From the IMG/VR virus record IMGVR_UViG_3300020202_000061, positions 248,001-312,000 of that record: DNA of 64,000 nucleotides; one strand, 5' to 3'. The notes under the pieces were generated by a model. That model did not search any database. It saw nothing but the letters and a program-made list of their open reading frames with translations, and had not been told where the DNA came from. Position 1 is the first letter of the stretch. Each line of letters begins with the position of its first letter. Positions 7,335-45,521 of the stretch are shown here, piece by piece. The position numbers were made by a program, and so were the translations under genes.

Positions 7335-7696
7335 TGGCTGTTGATCTGGTCATCTTTACGGGCGACCGAGGGGAGTATCGCCTGTGTAATCGAATCTGGC
7401 ATGGCGGTCCGGATCGTCCGGACTACGAGTTCATGCAGGAACTCACGTTGATGCAGGCGATCATCCTCTATCAGACGGGAGTCGCGGACGACTACACACC
7501 CGGTAAAGAACTGGAACGAGCAGAACCGGTCAAACCGGCCGATAGAAAGAAAAACAAACCGCGCTTCCGCGTGAAAGCGCTGATAAGAAAGATCGAGGGG
7601 GATCATGACTTGGGAGAAGCGTTGGATGGATGTGGCCGATCTGGTCGCATCCTGGAGCAAGGATCGCAGTCGCAAAACCGGGGCTGTGATTGTTGA
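7334..7696 (+). CDS. hypothetical protein
   Basis: TAATG coupling; overlaps the next gene by about 90 nt. Confidence 0.6.
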   Translation: MAVDLVIFTGDRGEYRLCNRIWHGGPDRPDYEFMQELTLMQAIILYQTGVADDYTPGKELERAEPVKPADRKKNKPRFRVKALIRKIEGDHDLGEALDGCGRSGRILEQGSQSQNRGCDC

Positions 7697-8063
7697 TGAT
7701 CGTCAAGTCGTCATCGCGGTGGGTTGGAACGGGTTCCCGCGTGGAATTGACGACAACGTAGAGCAGCGTCACGAGCGTCCGGCCAAGTATCAGTGGACCG
7801 AGCACGCCGAGCGCAATGCCATCTTCAATGCCGCCGCCAAGGGCATTTCCACTCGTGGAACCACCATGTATCTCACGTGGTATCCCTGCGCGGATTGCGC
7901 TCGCTCAGTGATCCAGGCGGGCATCTCCTATTTGGTCAGTGTTGAGCCGGACTGGAACGACCCGAAGTGGGGTCAGGACTTCGTCATGGTCAAGGACATG
8001 CTGTCCGAGGCCGGAGTCAACGTGCGTTTCGTCACGGATCGCACCGCACCAATCATGAAGTAA
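7605..8063 (+). CDS. dCMP deaminase
   Basis: SKD, GWNG.P, HAERNAI, PCADC. Confidence 0.95.
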   Translation: MTWEKRWMDVADLVASWSKDRSRKTGAVIVDDRQVVIAVGWNGFPRGIDDNVEQRHERPAKYQWTEHAERNAIFNAAAKGISTRGTTMYLTWYPCADCARSVIQAGISYLVSVEPDWNDPKWGQDFVMVKDMLSEAGVNVRFVTDRTAPIMK

Positions 8064-14141: not shown

Positions 14142-14319
14142 ACATTTTTCCCACACTCCGAAAGTTATTTTTACATCGTGATCTAAAAGGTTTCTATGTT
14201 TAACGGAAACCCCTTGATGTGATCATTAAAGACCTTATGTTACGCTATATACTAAGAGGCACCGAGGGTTTCAGATGCCTCTATGGGGATTCCAAATCAA
14301 CAACGGGGTCGAACAACGA

Positions 14320-16254
14320 ATGTCTAATCTCTTCGCGGATTTCAAGACAACTTTCGAAAAAACCAGGAAAACCGAACTCTCTCTCCAGGAATACTTGGAC
14401 CTGTGCAAACAGGATCGAATGGCTTACGCCTGGGCGGTGGAGAGAATGCTGGCGGCTATCGGCGAGCCCAAGCTAGTTGACACGTCCGAGGACCCGCGCC
14501 ATTCCAGAATCTTCCTGAACCGCACCATCAAGGTGTATGACGTGTTCAAGGATTTCTACGGGATGGAGGCGACCATCGAAAAGATCGTCGCCTTCTTCAT
14601 GAAGGCCGCTCAAGGTCTGGAAGAGAAGAAGCAGGTTCTCTATCTGATGGGGCCGGTTGGATCGGCTAAGTCCTCTCTGGCAGAGCGTCTCAAGGCTCTG
14701 ATGGAGAAGATGCCGATCTACGTGCTCAAGGCGGGTGATCAAATCAGCCCGGTGTTCGAGAATCCCTTGGGTCTGTTCGATCCGAACGTGTGGAGTGATC
14801 GCCTCCAAGAGGAATACGGGATTCCTCGTCGTTATCTGACCGGGTTGATGTCGCCTTGGGCGGTAAAGCGCCTGAACGAGGACTTCGACGGGGATATCAG
14901 CAAGTTCAGTGTGGTGAAGCTCTACCCGAGCAAGCTCAAGCAGATAGCGATCTCCAAGGTCGAACCCGGTGACGAGAACAACCAAGACATTTCGTCTCTG
15001 GTCGGTAAGGTTGATATCCGCAAGCTGGCGGAGTTCTCCGCTCGTGATACCGATGCCTACAGCTACTCCGGTGGTCTCTGCTTGGCCAACCAGGGCGTGC
15101 TGGAGTTCGTCGAGATGTTCAAGGCACCGATCAAGATGCTGCATCCGATGCTCACCGCGACCCAGGAGGGCAACTACAACGGCACCGAGGCGATCTCTGG
15201 TATTCCGTTCCAGGGTGTGATTCTGGCCCACTCCAACGAATCCGAATGGGAGTCGTTCAAGAGCAACAAGAACAACGAGGCATTCCTCGACCGCATCAGC
15301 ATCATCAAGGTCCCTTACTGCCTGCGTGTCACGGACGAGACCAAAATTTACCAGAAGCTCTTGCGTGATTCGTCCCTGGACAAGGCTCCATGCACACCCA
15401 AGACGCTGGAATTGCTCTCCCAAATGAGCGTGCTTTCCCGTCTGATCTATCCGGAGAACTCTTCGATCCATTCGAAGATGAAGGTCTACGATGGTGAGAA
15501 CATCAAGGAAACCGATCCCTACGCCAAATCTGTTCAGGAATATCGTGAACTGGCCGGGGTCAACGAGGGTATGACCGGTCTCAGCACCCGCTGGGCTTTC
15601 AAGGTGCTGTCATCGGTGTTCAATTATGATCCGAACGAGATCGGCGCGAATCCGGTCCATCTGTTCCGTATCTTGGAGGACAAGATCACTGAGGAACAAT
15701 TCCCGAAGGAAGTCGAAGAGGACCTTCGTGAACACCTCCAGTGGATCAAGGCCAAGTACATCGATTTCATCGGCAATGAAATCCAGGTTGCCTACCTGGA
15801 GTCCTACACCGAATACGGCCAGAACATGTTCGACCGCTACATCGTCTATGCGGATCATTGGATCGAGGATCGGGACTATCGTGATTCCGAGACCGGCGAG
15901 ATGTACAACCGCGAAACCCTGAATAAGGAACTCGAAAAGATCGAGAAGCCCTCCGGTATCGCGAATCCCAAGGAATTCCGTAACGAGGTGGTCAACTACT
16001 CTCTCCGTTACAAGGCCAACCACGGCAAGTATCCGAGGTGGAACTCCTACGAGAAGCTCAAGGAAATCATCGAGAAGAAGATGTTCGCGAACATCTCTGA
16101 TCTCCTGCCGGTGATCTCGTTCGAGAAGAAATCCTCCGAGGAGCACGAGAAGAAGCACAAGGATTTTGTGCAGCGCATGAAAGAGAAGGGATACAGCGAG
16201 CGCCAGACCCGTATCGTCGTGGACTGGTTCATGAAGGTACAGAAGTCCAACTGA
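14320..16254 (+). CDS. prkA: PrkA/YeaG family AAA+ serine kinase
   Basis: GPVGSAKSS P-loop, EPGDENNQDIS, ANQGVLEFVEMFKAPIK.LHP, HSNESEW, NNEAFLDR; alternative start 14275. Confidence 0.97.
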   Translation: MSNLFADFKTTFEKTRKTELSLQEYLDLCKQDRMAYAWAVERMLAAIGEPKLVDTSEDPRHSRIFLNRTIKVYDVFKDFYGMEATIEKIVAFFMKAAQGLEEKKQVLYLMGPVGSAKSSLAERLKALMEKMPIYVLKAGDQISPVFENPLGLFDPNVWSDRLQEEYGIPRRYLTGLMSPWAVKRLNEDFDGDISKFSVVKLYPSKLKQIAISKVEPGDENNQDISSLVGKVDIRKLAEFSARDTDAYSYSGGLCLANQGVLEFVEMFKAPIKMLHPMLTATQEGNYNGTEAISGIPFQGVILAHSNESEWESFKSNKNNEAFLDRISIIKVPYCLRVTDETKIYQKLLRDSSLDKAPCTPKTLELLSQMSVLSRLIYPENSSIHSKMKVYDGENIKETDPYAKSVQEYRELAGVNEGMTGLSTRWAFKVLSSVFNYDPNEIGANPVHLFRILEDKITEEQFPKEVEEDLREHLQWIKAKYIDFIGNEIQVAYLESYTEYGQNMFDRYIVYADHWIEDRDYRDSETGEMYNRETLNKELEKIEKPSGIANPKEFRNEVVNYSLRYKANHGKYPRWNSYEKLKEIIEKKMFANISDLLPVISFEKKSSEEHEKKHKDFVQRMKEKGYSERQTRIVVDWFMKVQKSN

Positions 16255-16265
16255 GGGCTATCATA

Positions 16266-17555
16266 GTGACCACGGTCATTGACAGACGTAAGACCGACCG
16301 CCAGAAGAACCTCTCCAATAGGCAGAGGTTCATCAAAAGAGCCAAGGAAGCGATCAAGAAGTCGATCCGTGGAGCCATCCTCAATAAGGATCGCTCGATC
16401 AAAGACTCATCCGGCGGTAATGTTCGAATCCCCAACAAAGGGACGACAGAGCCGAATTTCCGCAATGGAGACGGTGGTCGTAAGATCATCGTTCGTCCGG
16501 GTAATCCAGGCACTGTGCCGGGTGACAAGATTCCACGTCCCAGAAAGGATCAGACTTCGGGCCGTGGTAACAGTGATCCATCCAAAGACCCCGCTGAGTT
16601 GATGGATGAGTTCGAGTTCACGCTGACCCGTGAGGAATTTCTGGACTTCTTCTTTGAGGACCTGGAATTGCCCAACTTGGTCAAGACCGCCCTCAAAGAG
16701 GTGGTCGAGTACAAATGGTCCCGTTCGGGATTTGCCTCGGTCGGTATGCCGTCGAATCTCGACATTACCCGAACCTTCATCAATTCGATGGGTCGCCATT
16801 TCGCTCTGGCCGGAGCCTACCAGAAAAAGATCGACGAACTTCGCGCTAATGGTGGATCGGAAGAGGATATCGCGCTCTGGGAGAAGAGGAAGCGGACCAT
16901 CCCGTTCATGGATGACGTGGACCTGCGCTATCGCCTGTTTGTGAAGCAGCCCAAGCCGATCACCAAAGCGGTAATGTTCTGTCTGATGGACGTATCTGGC
17001 AGTATGGGCGAGTACGAGAAGGACTTGGCCAAGCGTTTCTTCATGCTCCTCTACATGTTTCTGGAGCGCAAATACGAGTCGGTCACCGTGGTGTTCATCC
17101 GTCATACCACCGAAGCCAAAGAGGTGGACGAGCAGGAGTTCTTCTACTCGAAAGAATCAGGTGGAACCGTGGTCAGCACGGCTCTGGAAATGACTGCTGA
17201 TCTGATTCAGCGGCGCTTCAACAGTTCAGACTACAACATCTACGTGAGCCAGTGTTCGGACGGCGACAATGCCTACGATGACAACTCCGTGTGCACCCAG
17301 ATCATCCGTGAGGATATTCTGCCTTATGTCCAGTATTTTGCGTATGTCCAGGTCGGACATCAGCGCGATGAGATGGCCAACATGTGGGGTGTGTTTGCGG
17401 GTCGTCTTGGGAACACCACGAGCACGAATTCCCTCTACGAGGTTTATAAGGAGATCGAGAAGAATACCTCCCATTTCAAGGTGAAGAACCTGAATGGTCC
17501 TGCCGACATCTACCCGGTGTTTCGCGAACTCTTTGAGAAGGACATCAAGGTATGA
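16266..17555 (+). CDS. yeaH: YeaH/YhbH (DUF444) vWA-like protein
   Basis: IDRR, NRQRF, AVMFCLMDVSGSM, FIRHT, SGGT, SDGDN. Confidence 0.96.
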   Translation: MTTVIDRRKTDRQKNLSNRQRFIKRAKEAIKKSIRGAILNKDRSIKDSSGGNVRIPNKGTTEPNFRNGDGGRKIIVRPGNPGTVPGDKIPRPRKDQTSGRGNSDPSKDPAELMDEFEFTLTREEFLDFFFEDLELPNLVKTALKEVVEYKWSRSGFASVGMPSNLDITRTFINSMGRHFALAGAYQKKIDELRANGGSEEDIALWEKRKRTIPFMDDVDLRYRLFVKQPKPITKAVMFCLMDVSGSMGEYEKDLAKRFFMLLYMFLERKYESVTVVFIRHTTEAKEVDEQEFFYSKESGGTVVSTALEMTADLIQRRFNSSDYNIYVSQCSDGDNAYDDNSVCTQIIREDILPYVQYFAYVQVGHQRDEMANMWGVFAGRLGNTTSTNSLYEVYKEIEKNTSHFKVKNLNGPADIYPVFRELFEKDIKV

Positions 17556-43249: not shown

Positions 43250-43343
43250 CCCATCACAAGCGGTGCCCAGCGGAGATGGTTGGGAGTAATTAAATGGTGA
43301 GTAATCATCAGCCGCTTCAACTTTTGAGGAACGAGTTACCACA

Positions 43344-43382
43344 ATGACCCTGATTCGACGCAAACGAAAGATTAGCGCCTAA
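43344..43382 (+). CDS. candidate leader peptide MTLIRRKRKISA
   Basis: GAGGA SD; codons CGA CGC AAA CGA AAG; followed by alternative hairpins. Confidence 0.55.
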   Translation: MTLIRRKRKISA

Positions 43383-43491
43383 TCACTCCGTCAGTCCACG
43401 GAGTGGTTCTAGGCTCCGTGGGTAATGGTACTCTCCCTAACTCCCACCTAAATCTGAGATAGGACGCCCCCACAAGGGGTTGTTGCTGTTT

Positions 43492-43568
43492 GTTCCCGTA
43501 GCTCAACTGGATAGAGCACCAGACTACGAATCTGGCGGTTGGGGGTTCGACTCCCTCCGGGAACGCCA
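43492..43568 (+). tRNA. tRNA-Arg(ACG)
   Basis: Loop CTACGAA, CCA. Confidence 0.95.
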
Positions 43569-43587
43569 CAGCACCTATCGACCACAT

Positions 43588-43664
43588 GATCCTGTAGCTC
43601 ATCGGACAAGAGCGCCGTCGTGCGAAGGCGGAGGTAGTGGGTTCGATTCCCACCTGGATCGCCA
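43588..43664 (+). tRNA. tRNA-Arg(GCG)
   Basis: Stem CCGTC/GGCGG, loop GTGCGAA, CCA. Confidence 0.9.
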
Positions 43665-43674
43665 AGTAAACCGA

Positions 43675-43750
43675 GACCCAGTAGCTCAATGGAGAGAGCA
43701 CCGTCGTTCGAAGGCGGGAGATAGAGGTTCAAGTCCTCTTTGGGTCGCTA
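43675..43750 (+). tRNA. tRNA-Arg(TCG)
   Basis: Stem CCGTC/GGCGG, loop GTTCGAA; 3' end CTA. Confidence 0.9.
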
Positions 43751-43765
43751 ACGAGGAATAGTCCC

Positions 43766-43981
43766 GTGTACAACATCAAGGAGATGGTCAAAGACAAACG
43801 CGTGAAGTTCGATTTCTACAGGGCCGGAGAACTCTGGTACATCACGGAGTGTGGCTTCCGCTTTCCGGTTCCGATCAGCGACACCGGAGATGCGGTGTTC
43901 AAGTCGGAGGATAAGGCGATCTTGTTCATGCGTTGGATCAGAAAGCACGTCGCGTCGTGTGAGGAAGGCGCGAAAGGGTAA
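43766..43981 (+). CDS. conserved phage protein within the tRNA cluster
   Basis: F..YR.G.LWY....F.FPVPI.DTGDA.F...DKA..FMRWIRK. Confidence 0.8.
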   Translation: MYNIKEMVKDKRVKFDFYRAGELWYITECGFRFPVPISDTGDAVFKSEDKAILFMRWIRKHVASCEEGAKG

Positions 43982-43988
43982 TTGGAGT

Positions 43989-44063
43989 GGGCCGGTAGCT
44001 CAGAGGCAGAGCAGCATCCTCTTAAGTTGACGGTCGTGGGTTCGATTCCCACCCGGCCCTCCA
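43989..44063 (+). tRNA. tRNA-Lys(CTT)
   Basis: Loop CTCTTAA, weak anticodon stem, U73, CCA. Confidence 0.85.
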
Positions 44064-44068
44064 AATTC

Positions 44069-44144
44069 GCCAGATTACAGTTTAGTGGTAGAACACGCGG
44101 CCGATAACCGTGGAGCGGGGGTTCGATTCCCTCATCTGGCACCA
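44069..44144 (+). tRNA. atypical tRNA-Ile(GAT) with C33
   Basis: Loop CCGATAA, 4-nt acceptor/D connector, CCA. Confidence 0.75.
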
Positions 44145-44145
44145 A

Positions 44146-44228
44146 GGGCACGGAGCTTTAGAGCCGACAGGAAAGGCAAGAGACTCTTACTCTCCCAGCA
44201 TGGGGTTCGACTCCTCCCGTGCCCGCCA
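44146..44228 (+). tRNA. 8/4-fold tRNA-like RNA, anticodon CTT
   Basis: Acceptor GGGCACGG/CCGTGCCC, 9-nt connector, D-loop GACAGGAAA, loop CTCTTAC, G73, CCA. Confidence 0.7.
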
Positions 44229-44229
44229 A

Positions 44230-44304
44230 GGTGGATTCTGTCTAATGGTAGGACGCGCGCCTGATGAGCGTGAAGTAGAGGTTCGATTCCTCTATCCACC
44301 ACCA
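44230..44304 (+). tRNA. atypical tRNA-Ile(GAT) with G37
   Basis: Loop CTGATGA, 3-nt connector, CCA. Confidence 0.8.
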
Positions 44305-44305
44305 A

Positions 44306-44381
44306 GGACCTGTAGCTGAGAGGTTTAGCGGCTGGCTTTTACCCAGCGTCAACGGGAGTTCGATTCTCTCCAGGTCCACCC
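44306..44381 (+). tRNA. tRNA-Lys(TTT)
   Basis: Stem GCTGG/CCAGC, loop CTTTTAC; 3' end CCC(A). Confidence 0.88.
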
Positions 44382-44395
44382 AGTTTCCCAGTAAT

Positions 44396-44479
44396 GGGCC
44401 GCGAGAGTATAGCAGTACAGGAATCTGCACCGGGCTTTTAATCCGGCCTCAAGGGGTTCGACTCCTCCGTGGCTCGCCA
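44396..44479 (+). tRNA. 8/4-fold tRNA-like RNA with irregular anticodon loop (TTA-like)
   Basis: Acceptor GGGCCGCG/CGTGGCTC, 8-nt connector, D-loop TACAGGAAT, CCGG-GCTTTAAT-CCGG, G73, CCA. Confidence 0.65.
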
Positions 44480-44483
44480 ATTG

Positions 44484-44527
44484 AAAAACCCCCGAAGTTT
44501 CCCATCTTGGAAACACGGGGGTTTTCT
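44484..44527 (+). terminator. terminator ending the tRNA cluster
   Basis: AAAACCCCCG...GTTTCC-CATCTT-GGAAAC...CGGGGGTTTT. Confidence 0.7.
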
Positions 44528-44528
44528 C

Positions 44529-44852
44529 ATGACCTGGAAAACATTTTGGATTTGCATGACCGTTTGTGTCTGCGGCGTGCTCGGAGTGACTGCGTGGACT
44601 ATAAGGGCAGAGCGTTCTGACCCGGTGGAGCAGAACGTGAAATGCCTCAACGTAATGGATCAACTCGACTCACTCGCCCAACAGGGTCAGCGAAAGATCG
44701 TCATGTTCCAGATCGGCAAACCCATGACCGACGTGGAGATGATCGTGGGCGATCCCGAGGAGGGCGACTGGACCCGCGTAATCGTGCACCAGGATGCGTC
44801 CGCGTGTATTGTCGAGTCGGGGAGGGGTTTGCTTTTGCCAACCCCAGAATAA
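44529..44852 (+). CDS. secreted or membrane-anchored hypothetical protein
   Basis: Signal-like N-terminus; G.WT....AC.V.SG. Confidence 0.7.
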   Translation: MTWKTFWICMTVCVCGVLGVTAWTIRAERSDPVEQNVKCLNVMDQLDSLAQQGQRKIVMFQIGKPMTDVEMIVGDPEEGDWTRVIVHQDASACIVESGRGLLLPTPE

Positions 44853-44891
44853 AGCCTTGACAGAACTCCGGGGAATCCCCATAATTCAGGC

Positions 44892-44969
44892 GTCCTCGTA
44901 GCTCAATTGGATCAGAGCGTTACTTTCCGAAGGTAGAGGTTGTGGGTTCGAGCCCCGCCGAGGACGCCA
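44892..44969 (+). tRNA. tRNA-Arg(CCG)
   Basis: Loop TTCCGAA, CCA; own promoter TTGACA-N17-CATAAT at 44857. Confidence 0.92.
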
Positions 44970-44970
44970 A

Positions 44971-45294
44971 ATGATCAAGTTGATTCTCACCTGCGGCGCA
45001 TGCCCCGAACAGTATGACGCATTCCTGGGCGAAGAGCGCGTAGGTTACCTCCGTCTGCGCCATGGCCGTTTCTACGTGGAATGCCCGGACTCGGGCGGTC
45101 TGCGCGTGTATGAGGCCACACCCAAGGGCGATGGCCTCTTCGACTCGGACGAGCGCGACTATTATCTGGCCCACGCCGTGGCCGCCATCGAGGGCTGGAT
45201 TGCCAGCGGCAAACCGACCCAGATCGGACAGCCCCCGCGCCCGAACGTGCAGTATGAGATCGTGGGTGTTGCTGAGGAATGGGGCATCTATTGA
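44971..45294 (+). CDS. conserved phage hypothetical protein
   Basis: TC.ACPEQYD...VGYLRLRHG...GDG.F...ER. Confidence 0.85.
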   Translation: MIKLILTCGACPEQYDAFLGEERVGYLRLRHGRFYVECPDSGGLRVYEATPKGDGLFDSDERDYYLAHAVAAIEGWIASGKPTQIGQPPRPNVQYEIVGVAEEWGIY

Positions 45295-45521
45295 TGACCT
45301 GGGCAAATCGACTTGGTATTCCAACCGCAGTGATTCTGTTCCTGTTAGCGCAGTGGGCCAACTACGATTACCTGCACGATGTACCGGTCTCGCATTGGGG
45401 CGCGATCAACGGGTGGTTCGTCCTGATTTACACGACCATCGCATTTCCTGGATTTGGGTATCTAATGCTCGGTCTGCTTGGACACTGCATTGACCTTTAC
45501 CTACAAAGGAAATCCAAATGA
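45294..45521 (+). CDS. small membrane protein
   Basis: 2 TM; TGATG coupling. Confidence 0.7.
   Translation: MTWANRLGIPTAVILFLLAQWANYDYLHDVPVSHWGAINGWFVLIYTTIAFPGFGYLMLGLLGHCIDLYLQRKSK

What the first reader, a model, noticed from the sequence alone, without database searches (positions are those of the whole stretch)
43492..44969. All four CGN arginine anticodons (ACG, GCG, TCG, CCG) encoded
Seen: four intact Arg tRNAs. The GCG and TCG species share the identical stem CCGTC/GGCGG and an unusual G32. Established: most bacteria read CGU/C/A with one ICG tRNA made by TadA, plus CCG, so GCG and UCG anticodons are rare. Inference: inosine-independent decoding, or escape from a nuclease that targets tRNA-Arg(ICG).
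Basis: partly seen in the sequence, partly recalled or inferred. Interest (0 to 1): 0.72.

Follow-up and report, generated by a model that had tools for sequence, protein, structure and literature searches.

The report
Jumbo phage with doubled arginine tRNAs
A soil jumbo phage carries its own complete tRNA set, in which the CGN arginine codons are covered twice: by the usual bacterial ACG+CCG pair and by an inosine-independent GCG+UCG pair that has an odd shared anticodon arm. This is a rare but not unique variant of something huge phages are known to do.

Summary
ARAGORN and Rfam find intact tRNA-Arg genes with anticodons ACG, GCG, UCG and CCG at the stated coordinates. All four have the ArgRS identity bases A20, C35 and G36.

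The setting changes the reading. The window lies in a 347.5-kb T4-like jumbo phage from soil. ARAGORN tRNA genes with 46 distinct anticodons, enough to read all 61 sense codons. Seven of the eight four-codon boxes carry G34+U34+C34. GCG/UCG/CCG therefore follows the genome-wide rule, and ACG is the extra.

The phage has no TadA. GCG+UCG is the known TadA-independent pair (Mollicutes), and ACG+CCG is the bacterial pair, so each CGN codon has two readers.

tRNA-Arg(GCG) recurs in 61 IMG/VR contigs, often next to UCG. ACG and GCG are normally alternatives. All four occur together in only two other sampled loci.

Two features are unusual:
- The GCG and UCG genes share an identical anticodon arm, which none of 53 other pairs does.
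- Both carry G32.

Escape from a nuclease is untested. Expression and charging are unknown.

Verdict: a real, rare variant of a known kind, of moderate interest.

The parts
43492..43568 (+). tRNA-Arg(ACG). Loop CUACGAA, stem CCAGA/UCUGG, A20, G73, CCA encoded. This is the bacterial-type species that TadA normally converts to ICG.
   Evidence: ARAGORN; Rfam 66.2 bits. Its 5' half matches abundant bacterial tRNA-Arg(ACG) sequences in other metagenomes.
43588..43664 (+). tRNA-Arg(GCG). Stem CCGUC/GGCGG, loop GUGCGAA (G32), A20, G73, CCA encoded. It has one U-U mismatch in the acceptor stem.
   Evidence: ARAGORN; Rfam 54.2 bits. Identical in an independent soil run.
43675..43748 (+). tRNA-Arg(UCG). 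Same stem CCGUC/GGCGG, loop GUUCGAA (G32), A20, G73, no encoded CCA.
   Evidence: ARAGORN; Rfam 57.5 bits. The minimum-energy fold is the cloverleaf, z -2.7. In a ~96-97% identical wastewater relative the anticodon arm is unchanged and the only two changes lie in the T loop.
44892..44969 (+). tRNA-Arg(CCG). Loop UUCCGAA, A20, G73, CCA encoded.
   Evidence: ARAGORN; Rfam 59.6 bits. The relative's single change inside the gene (44936 G>A) turns a G-U stem pair into A-U.
44857..44885 (+). Sigma-70-like promoter, TTGACA-17-CATAAT, ending 6 nt before the CCG tRNA.
   Evidence: Consensus scan, 11 of 12 matches. This is a prediction only.
44482..44529 (+). Strong hairpin followed by a U run. It probably terminates the tRNA cluster that starts with the ACG tRNA.
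   Evidence: Fold -24.8 kcal/mol, z -4.7, 0 of 200 shuffles as good.
43989..44380 (+). Rest of the same cluster: tRNA-Lys(CUU) 43989-44063, a degenerate Ile-like tRNA 44069-44144, tRNA-Ile(GAU) 44230-44304 and tRNA-Lys(UUU) 44306-44380.
   Evidence: ARAGORN; Rfam.
43766..43981 (+). Small ORF (71 aa) between the Arg trio and tRNA-Lys. It belongs to phage family phrog_20427, of unknown function.
   Evidence: PHROGs E 7e-34.
7605..8063 (+). The only cytidine-deaminase-fold gene in the genome. It is a dCMP deaminase, not TadA. This is the relevant negative.
   Evidence: PF00383 gives one hit. The TadA model scores 24 bits against a cut-off of 150. The best solved relatives are dCMP deaminases.

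Best explanation
The four genes are working elongator tRNA-Arg genes. They belong to a complete, self-contained tRNA complement of a T4-like jumbo phage.

The phage follows one rule in the four-codon boxes: a G34, a U34 and a C34 tRNA in seven of the eight, with only Gly lacking C34. For arginine that gives GCG, UCG and CCG. GCG reads CGC/CGU and UCG reads CGA/CGG without any wobble editing. This is the TadA-independent strategy known from Mollicutes.

On top of this the phage keeps the bacterial-type ACG tRNA. Host TadA can turn it into ICG. If left unedited it still pairs with CGU, the phage's commonest Arg codon.

Every CGN codon therefore has two phage-encoded readers. Host ArgRS charges them. 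The phage's own CCA-adding enzyme can finish the UCG species.

The likely benefit is sustained translation of a CGN-rich phage proteome (86% of Arg codons) when host tRNAs or their modification become limiting late in infection or in different hosts.

Shown: the genes, their structure and identity bases, the genome-wide pattern, the absence of TadA and ArgRS, and recurrence in other phages. Inferred: expression, charging, editing and the benefit.
For: - Gene calls and scores.
- Phage identity: IMG/VR virus record of 347,504 bp with a gp23-type capsid at 270 bits and a PolB 33-44% identical to jumbo phages.
- Complement: ARAGORN tRNA genes plus a tmRNA, with 46 distinct anticodons. All 61 sense codons are covered by simple wobble rules and each CGN codon is covered twice.
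- G/U/C34 sets are present for Leu(CUN), Val, Ser(UCN), Pro, Thr and Ala.
- Codon use: CGT .32, CGC .26, CGG .17, CGA .12.
- No TadA and no ArgRS. A CCA-adding enzyme is present.
- GCG+UCG is the TadA-free strategy (PMC3711424).
- tRNA-Arg(GCG) occurs in 61 IMG/VR contigs and sits with UCG in 29 of them.
- An unrelated 463-kb phage (G001, 68 tRNAs) shows the same full G/U/C34 sets plus ACG, CCG, GCG and UCG within 650 nt.
- PolB-related low-GC jumbo phages G004 and G005 carry GCG, with or without UCG, and no ACG.
- Variation in a ~96-97% identical relative spares stems and the anticodon arm.
- Huge phages are known to carry up to 67 tRNAs (PMC7162821).
Against: - There are no expression, charging or modification data. 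The only 'RNA' runs that hold related sequence look like DNA.
- The host is unknown, so phage and host codon use cannot be compared.
- Redundancy alone does not explain G32, or why the GCG and UCG genes share one anticodon arm.
- G32 is rare in tRNAs and might impair decoding.
- The GCG tRNA has a U-U acceptor mismatch, and its minimum-energy fold shifts the anticodon stem by one register.
- The record is about 90% complete, so the count of the complement is provisional.
Confidence: 0.6

Rival explanations
1. Counter-defence. The GCG and UCG tRNAs, with G32 in a shared anticodon arm, are variants that escape a host or competitor enzyme acting on the anticodon loop of tRNA-Arg, such as a colicin-D-like nuclease or another tRNA-targeting defence. 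They keep CGN decoding alive when host tRNA-Arg(ICG) is destroyed. Alternatively, they let the phage itself disable host tRNA-Arg or TadA.
For: - G32 occurs only in these two among the ARAGORN calls with a three-base anticodon in the genome.
- In bacterial-genome contigs, G32 in tRNA-Arg(GCG) is confined to dense tRNA arrays: 10 of 30 arrays against 0 of 89 solitary genes, Fisher p 2.8e-7.
- The anticodon arm is identical between the two genes, unlike 53 other GCG/UCG pairs, and is unchanged in a diverged relative.
- The phage has two RNA-ligase-family genes.
- Phage tRNAs with anticodon-loop changes are proposed or shown to evade tRNA nucleases (PMC10264068, PMC11464382, PMC11555353).
- Next to the genuine tRNA-Lys genes lie two aberrant Lys-like elements. 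tRNA-Lys is a classic nuclease target.
Against: - No nuclease, host or defence system has been identified.
- None of 61 IMG/VR tRNA-Arg(GCG) genes has G32, and only 1 of 30 UCG genes does. G32 is therefore not general to phage copies.
- G32 is also enriched in other G34 tRNAs (Gly-GCC, Val-GAC). That points to decoding tuning rather than an Arg-specific escape.
- The ACG and CCG tRNAs keep ordinary loops.
Confidence: 0.15
2. Codon-supply tuning. The phage gives each CGN codon its own Watson-Crick reader (A34:U, G34:C, U34:A, C34:G) simply to speed translation of its own codon mix. There is no link to editing independence or defence.
For: - CGN makes up 86% of the phage's Arg codons.
- CGT exceeds CGC, whereas C-ending codons lead in six of the other seven four-codon boxes (Gly is the exception). 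A U-pairing A34/I34 tRNA is therefore useful.
- Codon matching has been reported for the jumbo phage XacN1 (PMC5852040).
Against: - The set covers all codons, not only favoured ones.
- The host is unknown, so no mismatch can be shown.
- XacN1's tRNA species are all found in its host, whereas GCG is absent from most bacteria.
- In phage arrays ACG and GCG are normally alternatives: none of 115 ACG loci holds GCG.
Confidence: 0.2
3. Some of the four are decaying duplicates with no function. They are left over from tRNA gene turnover in a large array.
For: - The cluster does contain degenerate tRNA-like sequences: 44069-44144 with C33, 44145-44229 and 44392-44481.
- The GCG tRNA has a U-U mismatch.
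- UCG lacks an encoded CCA.
Against: - All four score 54-66 bits and keep every Arg identity base.
- Changes in a ~96-97% identical relative fall in loops or turn a G-U pair into A-U, while the neighbouring ORF differs at 15 of 161 positions.
- The sequence is identical in a second soil sample.
Confidence: 0.05

Closest known systems
tRNA complements of jumbo and huge phages (XacN1, PMC5852040; huge phages, PMC7162821)
   Same: These are large T4-like or other large phages with dozens of clustered tRNA genes covering all amino acids. They also carry a CUA suppressor tRNA, a CCA-adding enzyme and RNA repair genes. The proposed role is independence from host translation.
   Different: XacN1 has 28 tRNA species per terminal repeat, and all are shared with its host apart from its CUA suppressors. 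This phage has 46 distinct anticodons, including GCG, which most bacteria lack. It also doubles the CGN box.
TadA-independent CGN decoding in Mollicutes (tRNA-Arg GCG + UCG; PMC3711424)
   Same: The same anticodon pair reads all four CGN codons without inosine.
   Different: In Mollicutes the pair replaces ACG after loss of tadA. Here it coexists with ACG and CCG in a virus, and the TadA status of the host is unknown.
Phage tRNAs that evade tRNA-targeting defences (T5 tRNA-Lys versus PARIS, PMC11464382; retron evasion, PMC11555353; the loop-mutation hypothesis, PMC10264068)
   Same: These are phage-encoded isoacceptors whose anticodon loops differ from the common bacterial form. Here the difference is G32.
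   Different: No cognate nuclease is known here and no resistance has been shown. Position 32 is not a documented determinant for any tRNA-Arg nuclease that I know of.
tRNA gene arrays on bacterial mobile elements and MAG contigs (my own knowledge of published 'tRNA array units', plus loci L312, L314, L344, L397, L417 here)
   Same: These are dense arrays of 20-34 tRNAs holding GCG+UCG. Ten of them have the same loop type, GUGCGA(A/U), in tRNA-Arg(GCG).
   Different: The five genomes tested (L344, L417, L312, L350, L397) lack a PolB like this phage's. Their UCG tRNAs have C32 or U32. None of the sampled loci showed ACG next to GCG.

Membership tests
Bacterial-type class I elongator tRNA-Arg | Cloverleaf with a 7-bp acceptor stem, 4-bp D stem, 5-bp anticodon stem, 7-nt loop with U33, and a GTTCRA T loop; scores above the Rfam tRNA threshold. 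| tested here: met
   ARAGORN structures. RF00005 scores 54-66 bits against a gathering score of 29.
Bacterial-type class I elongator tRNA-Arg | ArgRS identity bases A20, C35 and G/U36 (established for E. coli ArgRS; my own knowledge). | tested here: met
   Read directly from the sequences. All four have A after G18G19, plus C35, G36 and G73.
Bacterial-type class I elongator tRNA-Arg | Expressed, processed and charged with arginine. | not testable with these tools
   No RNA data for this phage. The runs labelled RNA look like DNA.
TadA substrate tRNA-Arg(ACG) | A34 in the loop C32-U33-A34-C35-G36-A37-A38 on a regular stem. | tested here: met
   The loop is CUACGAA. The same loop occurs in 6 of 7 other phage ACG tRNAs. 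TadA contacts C32-A38 (PMC3711424).
TadA substrate tRNA-Arg(ACG) | Actual A-to-I conversion in the infected cell. | not testable with these tools
   The phage has no TadA. The host is unknown.
TadA-independent CGN decoding (Mollicutes type) | tRNA-Arg(GCG) and tRNA-Arg(UCG) are both present. | tested here: met
TadA-independent CGN decoding (Mollicutes type) | tRNA-Arg(ACG) and tadA are absent. | tested here: not met
   ACG is present at 43492-43568. tadA is absent from the phage, but the host's status is unknown.
Near-complete tRNA complement of a huge phage | A phage genome over 200 kb with hallmark genes and tens of clustered tRNA genes. | tested here: met
   347.5 kb; gp23 capsid; PolB; 55 tRNA genes between 64 and 293 kb.
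Nuclease-evading phage tRNA | Anticodon-loop difference from the common cellular form. | tested here: met
   G32 here, against C32 or U32 in 61 of 61 viral tRNA-Arg(GCG) genes and in all 89 solitary bacterial loci, none of which has G32.
Nuclease-evading phage tRNA | A cognate tRNA-Arg-directed nuclease in the host, and demonstrated resistance. | not testable with these tools
   The host and its defences are unknown.

The most novel reading that the evidence does not exclude
The shared G32 anticodon arm of the GCG and UCG tRNAs may be a selected module copied from one gene to the other. It would make CGN decoding immune to an enzyme that acts on the ordinary tRNA-Arg anticodon loop, either a host tRNA nuclease or modifier or the phage's own host-shutoff activity. 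The ACG/CCG pair would then serve undefended cells. The same genome also holds a serine-type tRNA body with the Arg anticodon CCG. This raises the possibility that the phage deliberately manipulates how CGG is read.
Probability: 0.12. Interest if true: 0.7.

Novelty: new variant of a known kind. Interest (0 to 1): 0.42.

Why it matters
tRNA-rich phages do not simply copy host tRNAs. In the CGN box they often use G34 and U34 species that most bacteria lack, so they need no wobble inosine. A few phages stack both decoding strategies.

This gives a natural test bed for three questions:
- Can GCG+UCG replace the essential TadA/ICG system?
- What does position 32 do in strong G/C anticodons?
- Does tRNA-Arg, like tRNA-Lys and tRNA-Tyr, lie on the front line between phages and tRNA-targeting defences?

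The practical value is modest: a ready-made, possibly orthogonal set of Arg tRNAs.

Tried and rejected
- **Close relatives by DNA.** No match in the phage collection. An exact scan for the anticodon arm in IMG/VR gave only three chance hits in non-tRNA sequence.
- **Synteny through the neighbouring small ORF 44971-45294.** The protein is widespread in unrelated phages and useless for this purpose.
- **Phage TadA.** Rejected. The single deaminase-fold gene is a dCMP deaminase, and the TadA model finds nothing over its cut-off in this phage or in four other phages that carry ACG with GCG.
- **Phage ArgRS, peptidyl-tRNA hydrolase, RtcB.** Not found. The T4 Rnl1 search was uninformative because its controls were silent.
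- **Expression evidence.** The runs labelled RNA-Seq behave like DNA and hold a relative, not transcripts.
- **Kinship of the G32 arrays.** The MAG genomes tested lack this phage's PolB.
- **Neighbouring ORFs.** Annotation gave only families of unknown function.
- **Other Ser-bodied CCG tRNAs.** A narrow scan for them in IMG/VR found none.
- **Host identification.** Not achieved. Weak hints, such as the best PolB hit to a Sinorhizobium phage and a 74% DNA match of one small ORF to Rhizobium phages, are not enough.
Full report
**1. Observation**

ARAGORN finds 18 tRNA genes in the window, all on the + strand. Four are tRNA-Arg: ACG 43492-43568, GCG 43588-43664, UCG 43675-43748 and CCG 44892-44969. 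Rfam's tRNA model scores them 66.2, 54.2, 57.5 and 59.6 bits against a gathering score of 29.

Each folds as a standard cloverleaf. Read directly from the sequence, each has an A right after G18G19 (A20), plus C35, G36 and G73. From established knowledge of E. coli ArgRS, these are the arginine identity bases.

ACG, GCG and CCG encode their CCA end; UCG does not. The GCG species has one U-U mismatch in the acceptor stem.

GCG and UCG share the stem CCGUC/GGCGG and a loop that starts with G32.

A second soil metagenome, from another sample and study, holds 43499-45236 in three contigs with zero differences. The array is therefore not an assembly artefact.

**2. What the sequence belongs to**

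The window is bases 248001-312000 of a 347,504-bp IMG/VR virus record. The record is linear, about 90% complete and 54.5% G+C.

It encodes a T4 gp23-type major capsid protein at 270 bits. It also encodes a family B DNA polymerase that is 32-34% identical to those of jumbo phages Phosso, RsoM2USA, SCTP-2 and the 121Q group. It is 40-44% identical to two uncultured jumbo phages, G004 and G005.

No near-identical DNA exists in the phage collection. The source is soil. A relative about 96-97% identical occurs in wastewater runs. The host is unknown.

**3. The genome-wide tRNA pattern**

ARAGORN on the whole genome gives 55 tRNA calls plus a tmRNA, spread over 64-293 kb. There are 46 distinct anticodons, 45 sense plus a CUA suppressor. 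By simple wobble rules they cover all 61 sense codons.

The four-codon boxes follow one rule, G34 + U34 + C34:
- Leu: GAG, UAG, CAG
- Val: GAC, UAC, CAC
- Ser: GGA, UGA, CGA
- Pro: GGG, UGG, CGG
- Thr: GGU, UGU, CGU
- Ala: GGC, UGC, CGC

Gly has only GCC and UCC.

Seen this way, Arg GCG/UCG/CCG is the phage's normal pattern, and ACG is the extra member. Each CGN codon is read by two phage tRNAs: CGU and CGC by GCG and ACG, CGA by UCG and ACG (as ICG), and CGG by CCG and UCG.

A crude ORF set (395 ORFs of at least 80 aa, covering 83% of the genome) gives these Arg codon shares: CGT .32, CGC .26, CGG .17, CGA .12, AGG .08 and AGA .06. Unlike six of the other seven four-codon boxes (Gly is the exception), the U-ending codon beats the C-ending one. 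An A34/I34 reader is therefore not superfluous.

**4. Enzymes that bear on the interpretation**

The only cytidine-deaminase-fold gene (window 7605-8063) is a dCMP deaminase. Its best solved relatives are dCMP deaminases, and NCBI's TadA model gives 24 bits against a cut-off of 150.

The phage therefore cannot make inosine itself. Four other phages that carry ACG together with GCG cannot either.

There is no ArgRS, so charging must use the host enzyme.

A CCA-adding enzyme and two RNA-ligase-family genes are present. No peptidyl-tRNA hydrolase or RtcB was found.

**5. How unusual the feature is**

A structure-aware pattern for bacterial-type tRNA-Arg(GCG) found 61 IMG/VR contigs. All were confirmed by ARAGORN, and many are 100-580 kb with dense tRNA arrays.

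Within those partial loci, GCG sits with UCG in 29 and with ACG in only 7. All four CGN anticodons occur in 2:
- L066, from a 463-kb phage
- L058, an 8.9-kb fragment

None of the 115 ARAGORN-confirmed ACG loci holds a GCG gene. In phage arrays ACG and GCG are therefore normally alternatives, and having both is rare.

Whole-genome comparison shows three things:
- The PolB-related low-GC jumbo phages G004 and G005 use GCG, with or without UCG, and have no ACG or CCG.
- The search found no PolB homologue in the 463-kb phage G001 (55% G+C, 68 tRNAs), so it appears to be an unrelated lineage.
- G001 nonetheless repeats this phage's design exactly: full G/U/C34 sets in all eight boxes, plus CCG, GCG, UCG and ACG within 650 nt.

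The lineages include Planctomycetota, Dehalococcoidia, Pyrinomonadaceae, CPR groups and Borreliella. GCG is therefore uncommon in bacteria but not vanishingly rare.

The literature gives the cellular precedent. Most bacteria use ICG+CCG. Mollicutes without tadA use GCG+UCG (PMC3711424). Huge phages with up to 67 tRNAs are known (PMC7162821). XacN1's tRNA species, apart from its CUA suppressors, are all shared with its host (PMC5852040).

**6. The odd anticodon arm**

Overall, the GCG and UCG genes are 76% identical, much like any two of the four (69-76%). Their 17-nt anticodon arm, however, differs only at the wobble base.

In 53 GCG/UCG pairs from other arrays, no pair shares an anticodon stem. 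The minimum is 2 stem differences and at least 3 differences across the arm, with a median overall identity of 0.68. This points to copying of the arm between the two genes, or to strong selection for this particular arm.

G32 statistics:
- G32 is absent from all 61 viral GCG tRNAs sampled.
- It occurs in 1 of 30 viral UCG tRNAs.
- In bacterial-genome contigs, 10 GCG tRNAs have the loop GUGCGA(A/U). All 10 lie in loci with at least 7 tRNAs: 10 of 30 arrays against 0 of 89 solitary genes, Fisher p 2.8e-7.
- The array-bearing genomes tested lack this phage's PolB.
- Across arrays, G32 is rare overall (34 of 1289 tRNAs). It is enriched in G34 tRNAs with strong anticodons: Arg-GCG 10/74, Gly-GCC 6/42, Val-GAC 4/13.

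That enrichment fits tuning of the 32-38 pair for decoding at least as well as it fits nuclease escape.

In the wastewater relative the UCG arm, including G32, is unchanged. The only two changes inside that tRNA lie in the T loop. The single change inside the CCG tRNA turns a G-U stem pair into A-U. By contrast, the neighbouring small ORF differs at 15 of 161 positions. This is what purifying selection on working tRNAs looks like, although the sample is small.

**7. Transcription signals (predictions only)**

- A weak terminator-like hairpin lies just before the ACG gene (43466-43480).
- ACG, GCG and UCG follow with spacers of 19 and 10 nt. Then come a 71-aa ORF, Lys, Ile and Lys tRNAs and some degenerate tRNA-like elements.
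- A strong hairpin with a U run lies at 44482-44529 (-24.8 kcal/mol, z -4.7).
- The CCG gene stands apart behind a near-consensus sigma-70-type promoter at 44857-44885.

**8. Explanation**

The best-supported reading (confidence about 0.6) is doubled coverage of the CGN box. It combines an editing-independent GCG+UCG pair, which follows the phage's general G34/U34 rule, with a bacterial-type ACG+CCG pair. Both sit inside a complete phage tRNA set that buffers translation against loss or shortage of host tRNAs and of host modification capacity.

The capacity is there, but inosine is not avoided, and the design is not specific to arginine.

The second idea, escape from a tRNA-Arg nuclease, remains a hypothesis (about 0.15). 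The G32 arm and the repair genes hint at it, but no enzyme or host is in hand.

Plain codon-supply tuning (about 0.2) and gene decay (about 0.05) are the remaining rivals. The first three readings are not mutually exclusive.

**9. Verdict**

The feature is real, and it is rare even among tRNA-rich phages. It is a variant of a known kind, the huge-phage tRNA complement, combined with a known decoding strategy.

The shared G32 arm and the recurrence of G32 in array-borne tRNA-Arg(GCG) are, to my knowledge, undescribed and cheap to test.

The most surprising thing met on the way lies outside the window: a serine-type tRNA body carrying the arginine anticodon CCG.

Noticed in passing
G000:C1:190845-190934 (+), outside the window, 57 kb upstream of its start: ARAGORN's second 'tRNA-Arg(CCG)' is a 90-nt class II tRNA. 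It has a 3-bp D stem, no A20, a 6-bp long variable arm, an acceptor stem starting GGAA, G73 and an encoded CCA. Its best match among 2869 array tRNAs is a phage tRNA-Ser(CGA) with the same anticodon stem, CTCGC/GCGAG. It looks like a seryl-type tRNA that would read the Arg codon CGG. A narrow IMG/VR scan found no second example.
   Followed up: partly
window 44145-44229 and 44392-44481 (+): These are two tRNA-like elements with good acceptor and T arms and anticodon loops of Lys type (CUU and UUU). Their D regions are aberrant and enlarged. ARAGORN and Rfam miss both. They sit beside the genuine tRNA-Lys(CUU) and tRNA-Lys(UUU) genes. They may be decayed copies or variant Lys tRNAs.
   Followed up: partly
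window 44069-44144 (+): A degenerate tRNA-Ile(GAU)-like gene with C33 instead of U33 and a weak D arm. Rfam gives 41 bits. ARAGORN finds it only at a relaxed threshold.
   Followed up: partly
G000:C1:218699-218776; also G001 (3 copies), G004, G005 (2 copies), L006: Amber-suppressor-type tRNAs (anticodon CUA) recur in these tRNA-rich phages, as reported for XacN1. I did not test whether TAG is read through in any gene.
   Followed up: no
G000:C1:133337-133428; 18 more in loci such as L023, L314, L364: tRNA-Ile(UAU) genes of 91-96 nt with a long extra arm recur across unrelated phage and MAG arrays. Many share an insert motif, such as GCGCCAGAU.AGCG. Other class-II-sized tRNAs with class I anticodons (Asn, Cys, Lys, Thr, Trp) also recur.
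   Followed up: no
loci L312, L314, L315, L332, L344, L350, L361, L397, L400, L417 (bacterial MAG or genome contigs): These loci hold 7-34 tRNA genes within at most 8 kb and include GCG, sometimes with UCG. They lie on contigs assigned to Acidobacteriota, Planctomycetota, Hyphomicrobiaceae and others. They could be mobile tRNA arrays or mis-binned phage DNA. The five genomes tested lack this phage's PolB.
   Followed up: partly
window 14275-17555 (+): A PrkA-type serine kinase (E 4e-170) followed by a DUF444/YeaH-like protein (E 1.5e-114). This is a bacterial stress-response gene pair carried by the phage.
   Followed up: no
window 43300-45300, as laid on runs X3 and X4: Wastewater runs labelled RNA-Seq (probably DNA) hold pieces of a relative about 96-97% identical. 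The pieces include non-tRNA parts, so this phage lineage is not confined to soil.
   Followed up: partly
G000:C1:128216-128552; G000:C1:226543-226723: The phage encodes a tmRNA. Its two CAU tRNAs show no obvious initiator features: neither has three G-C pairs at the base of the anticodon stem. Initiation probably still depends on the host.
   Followed up: no
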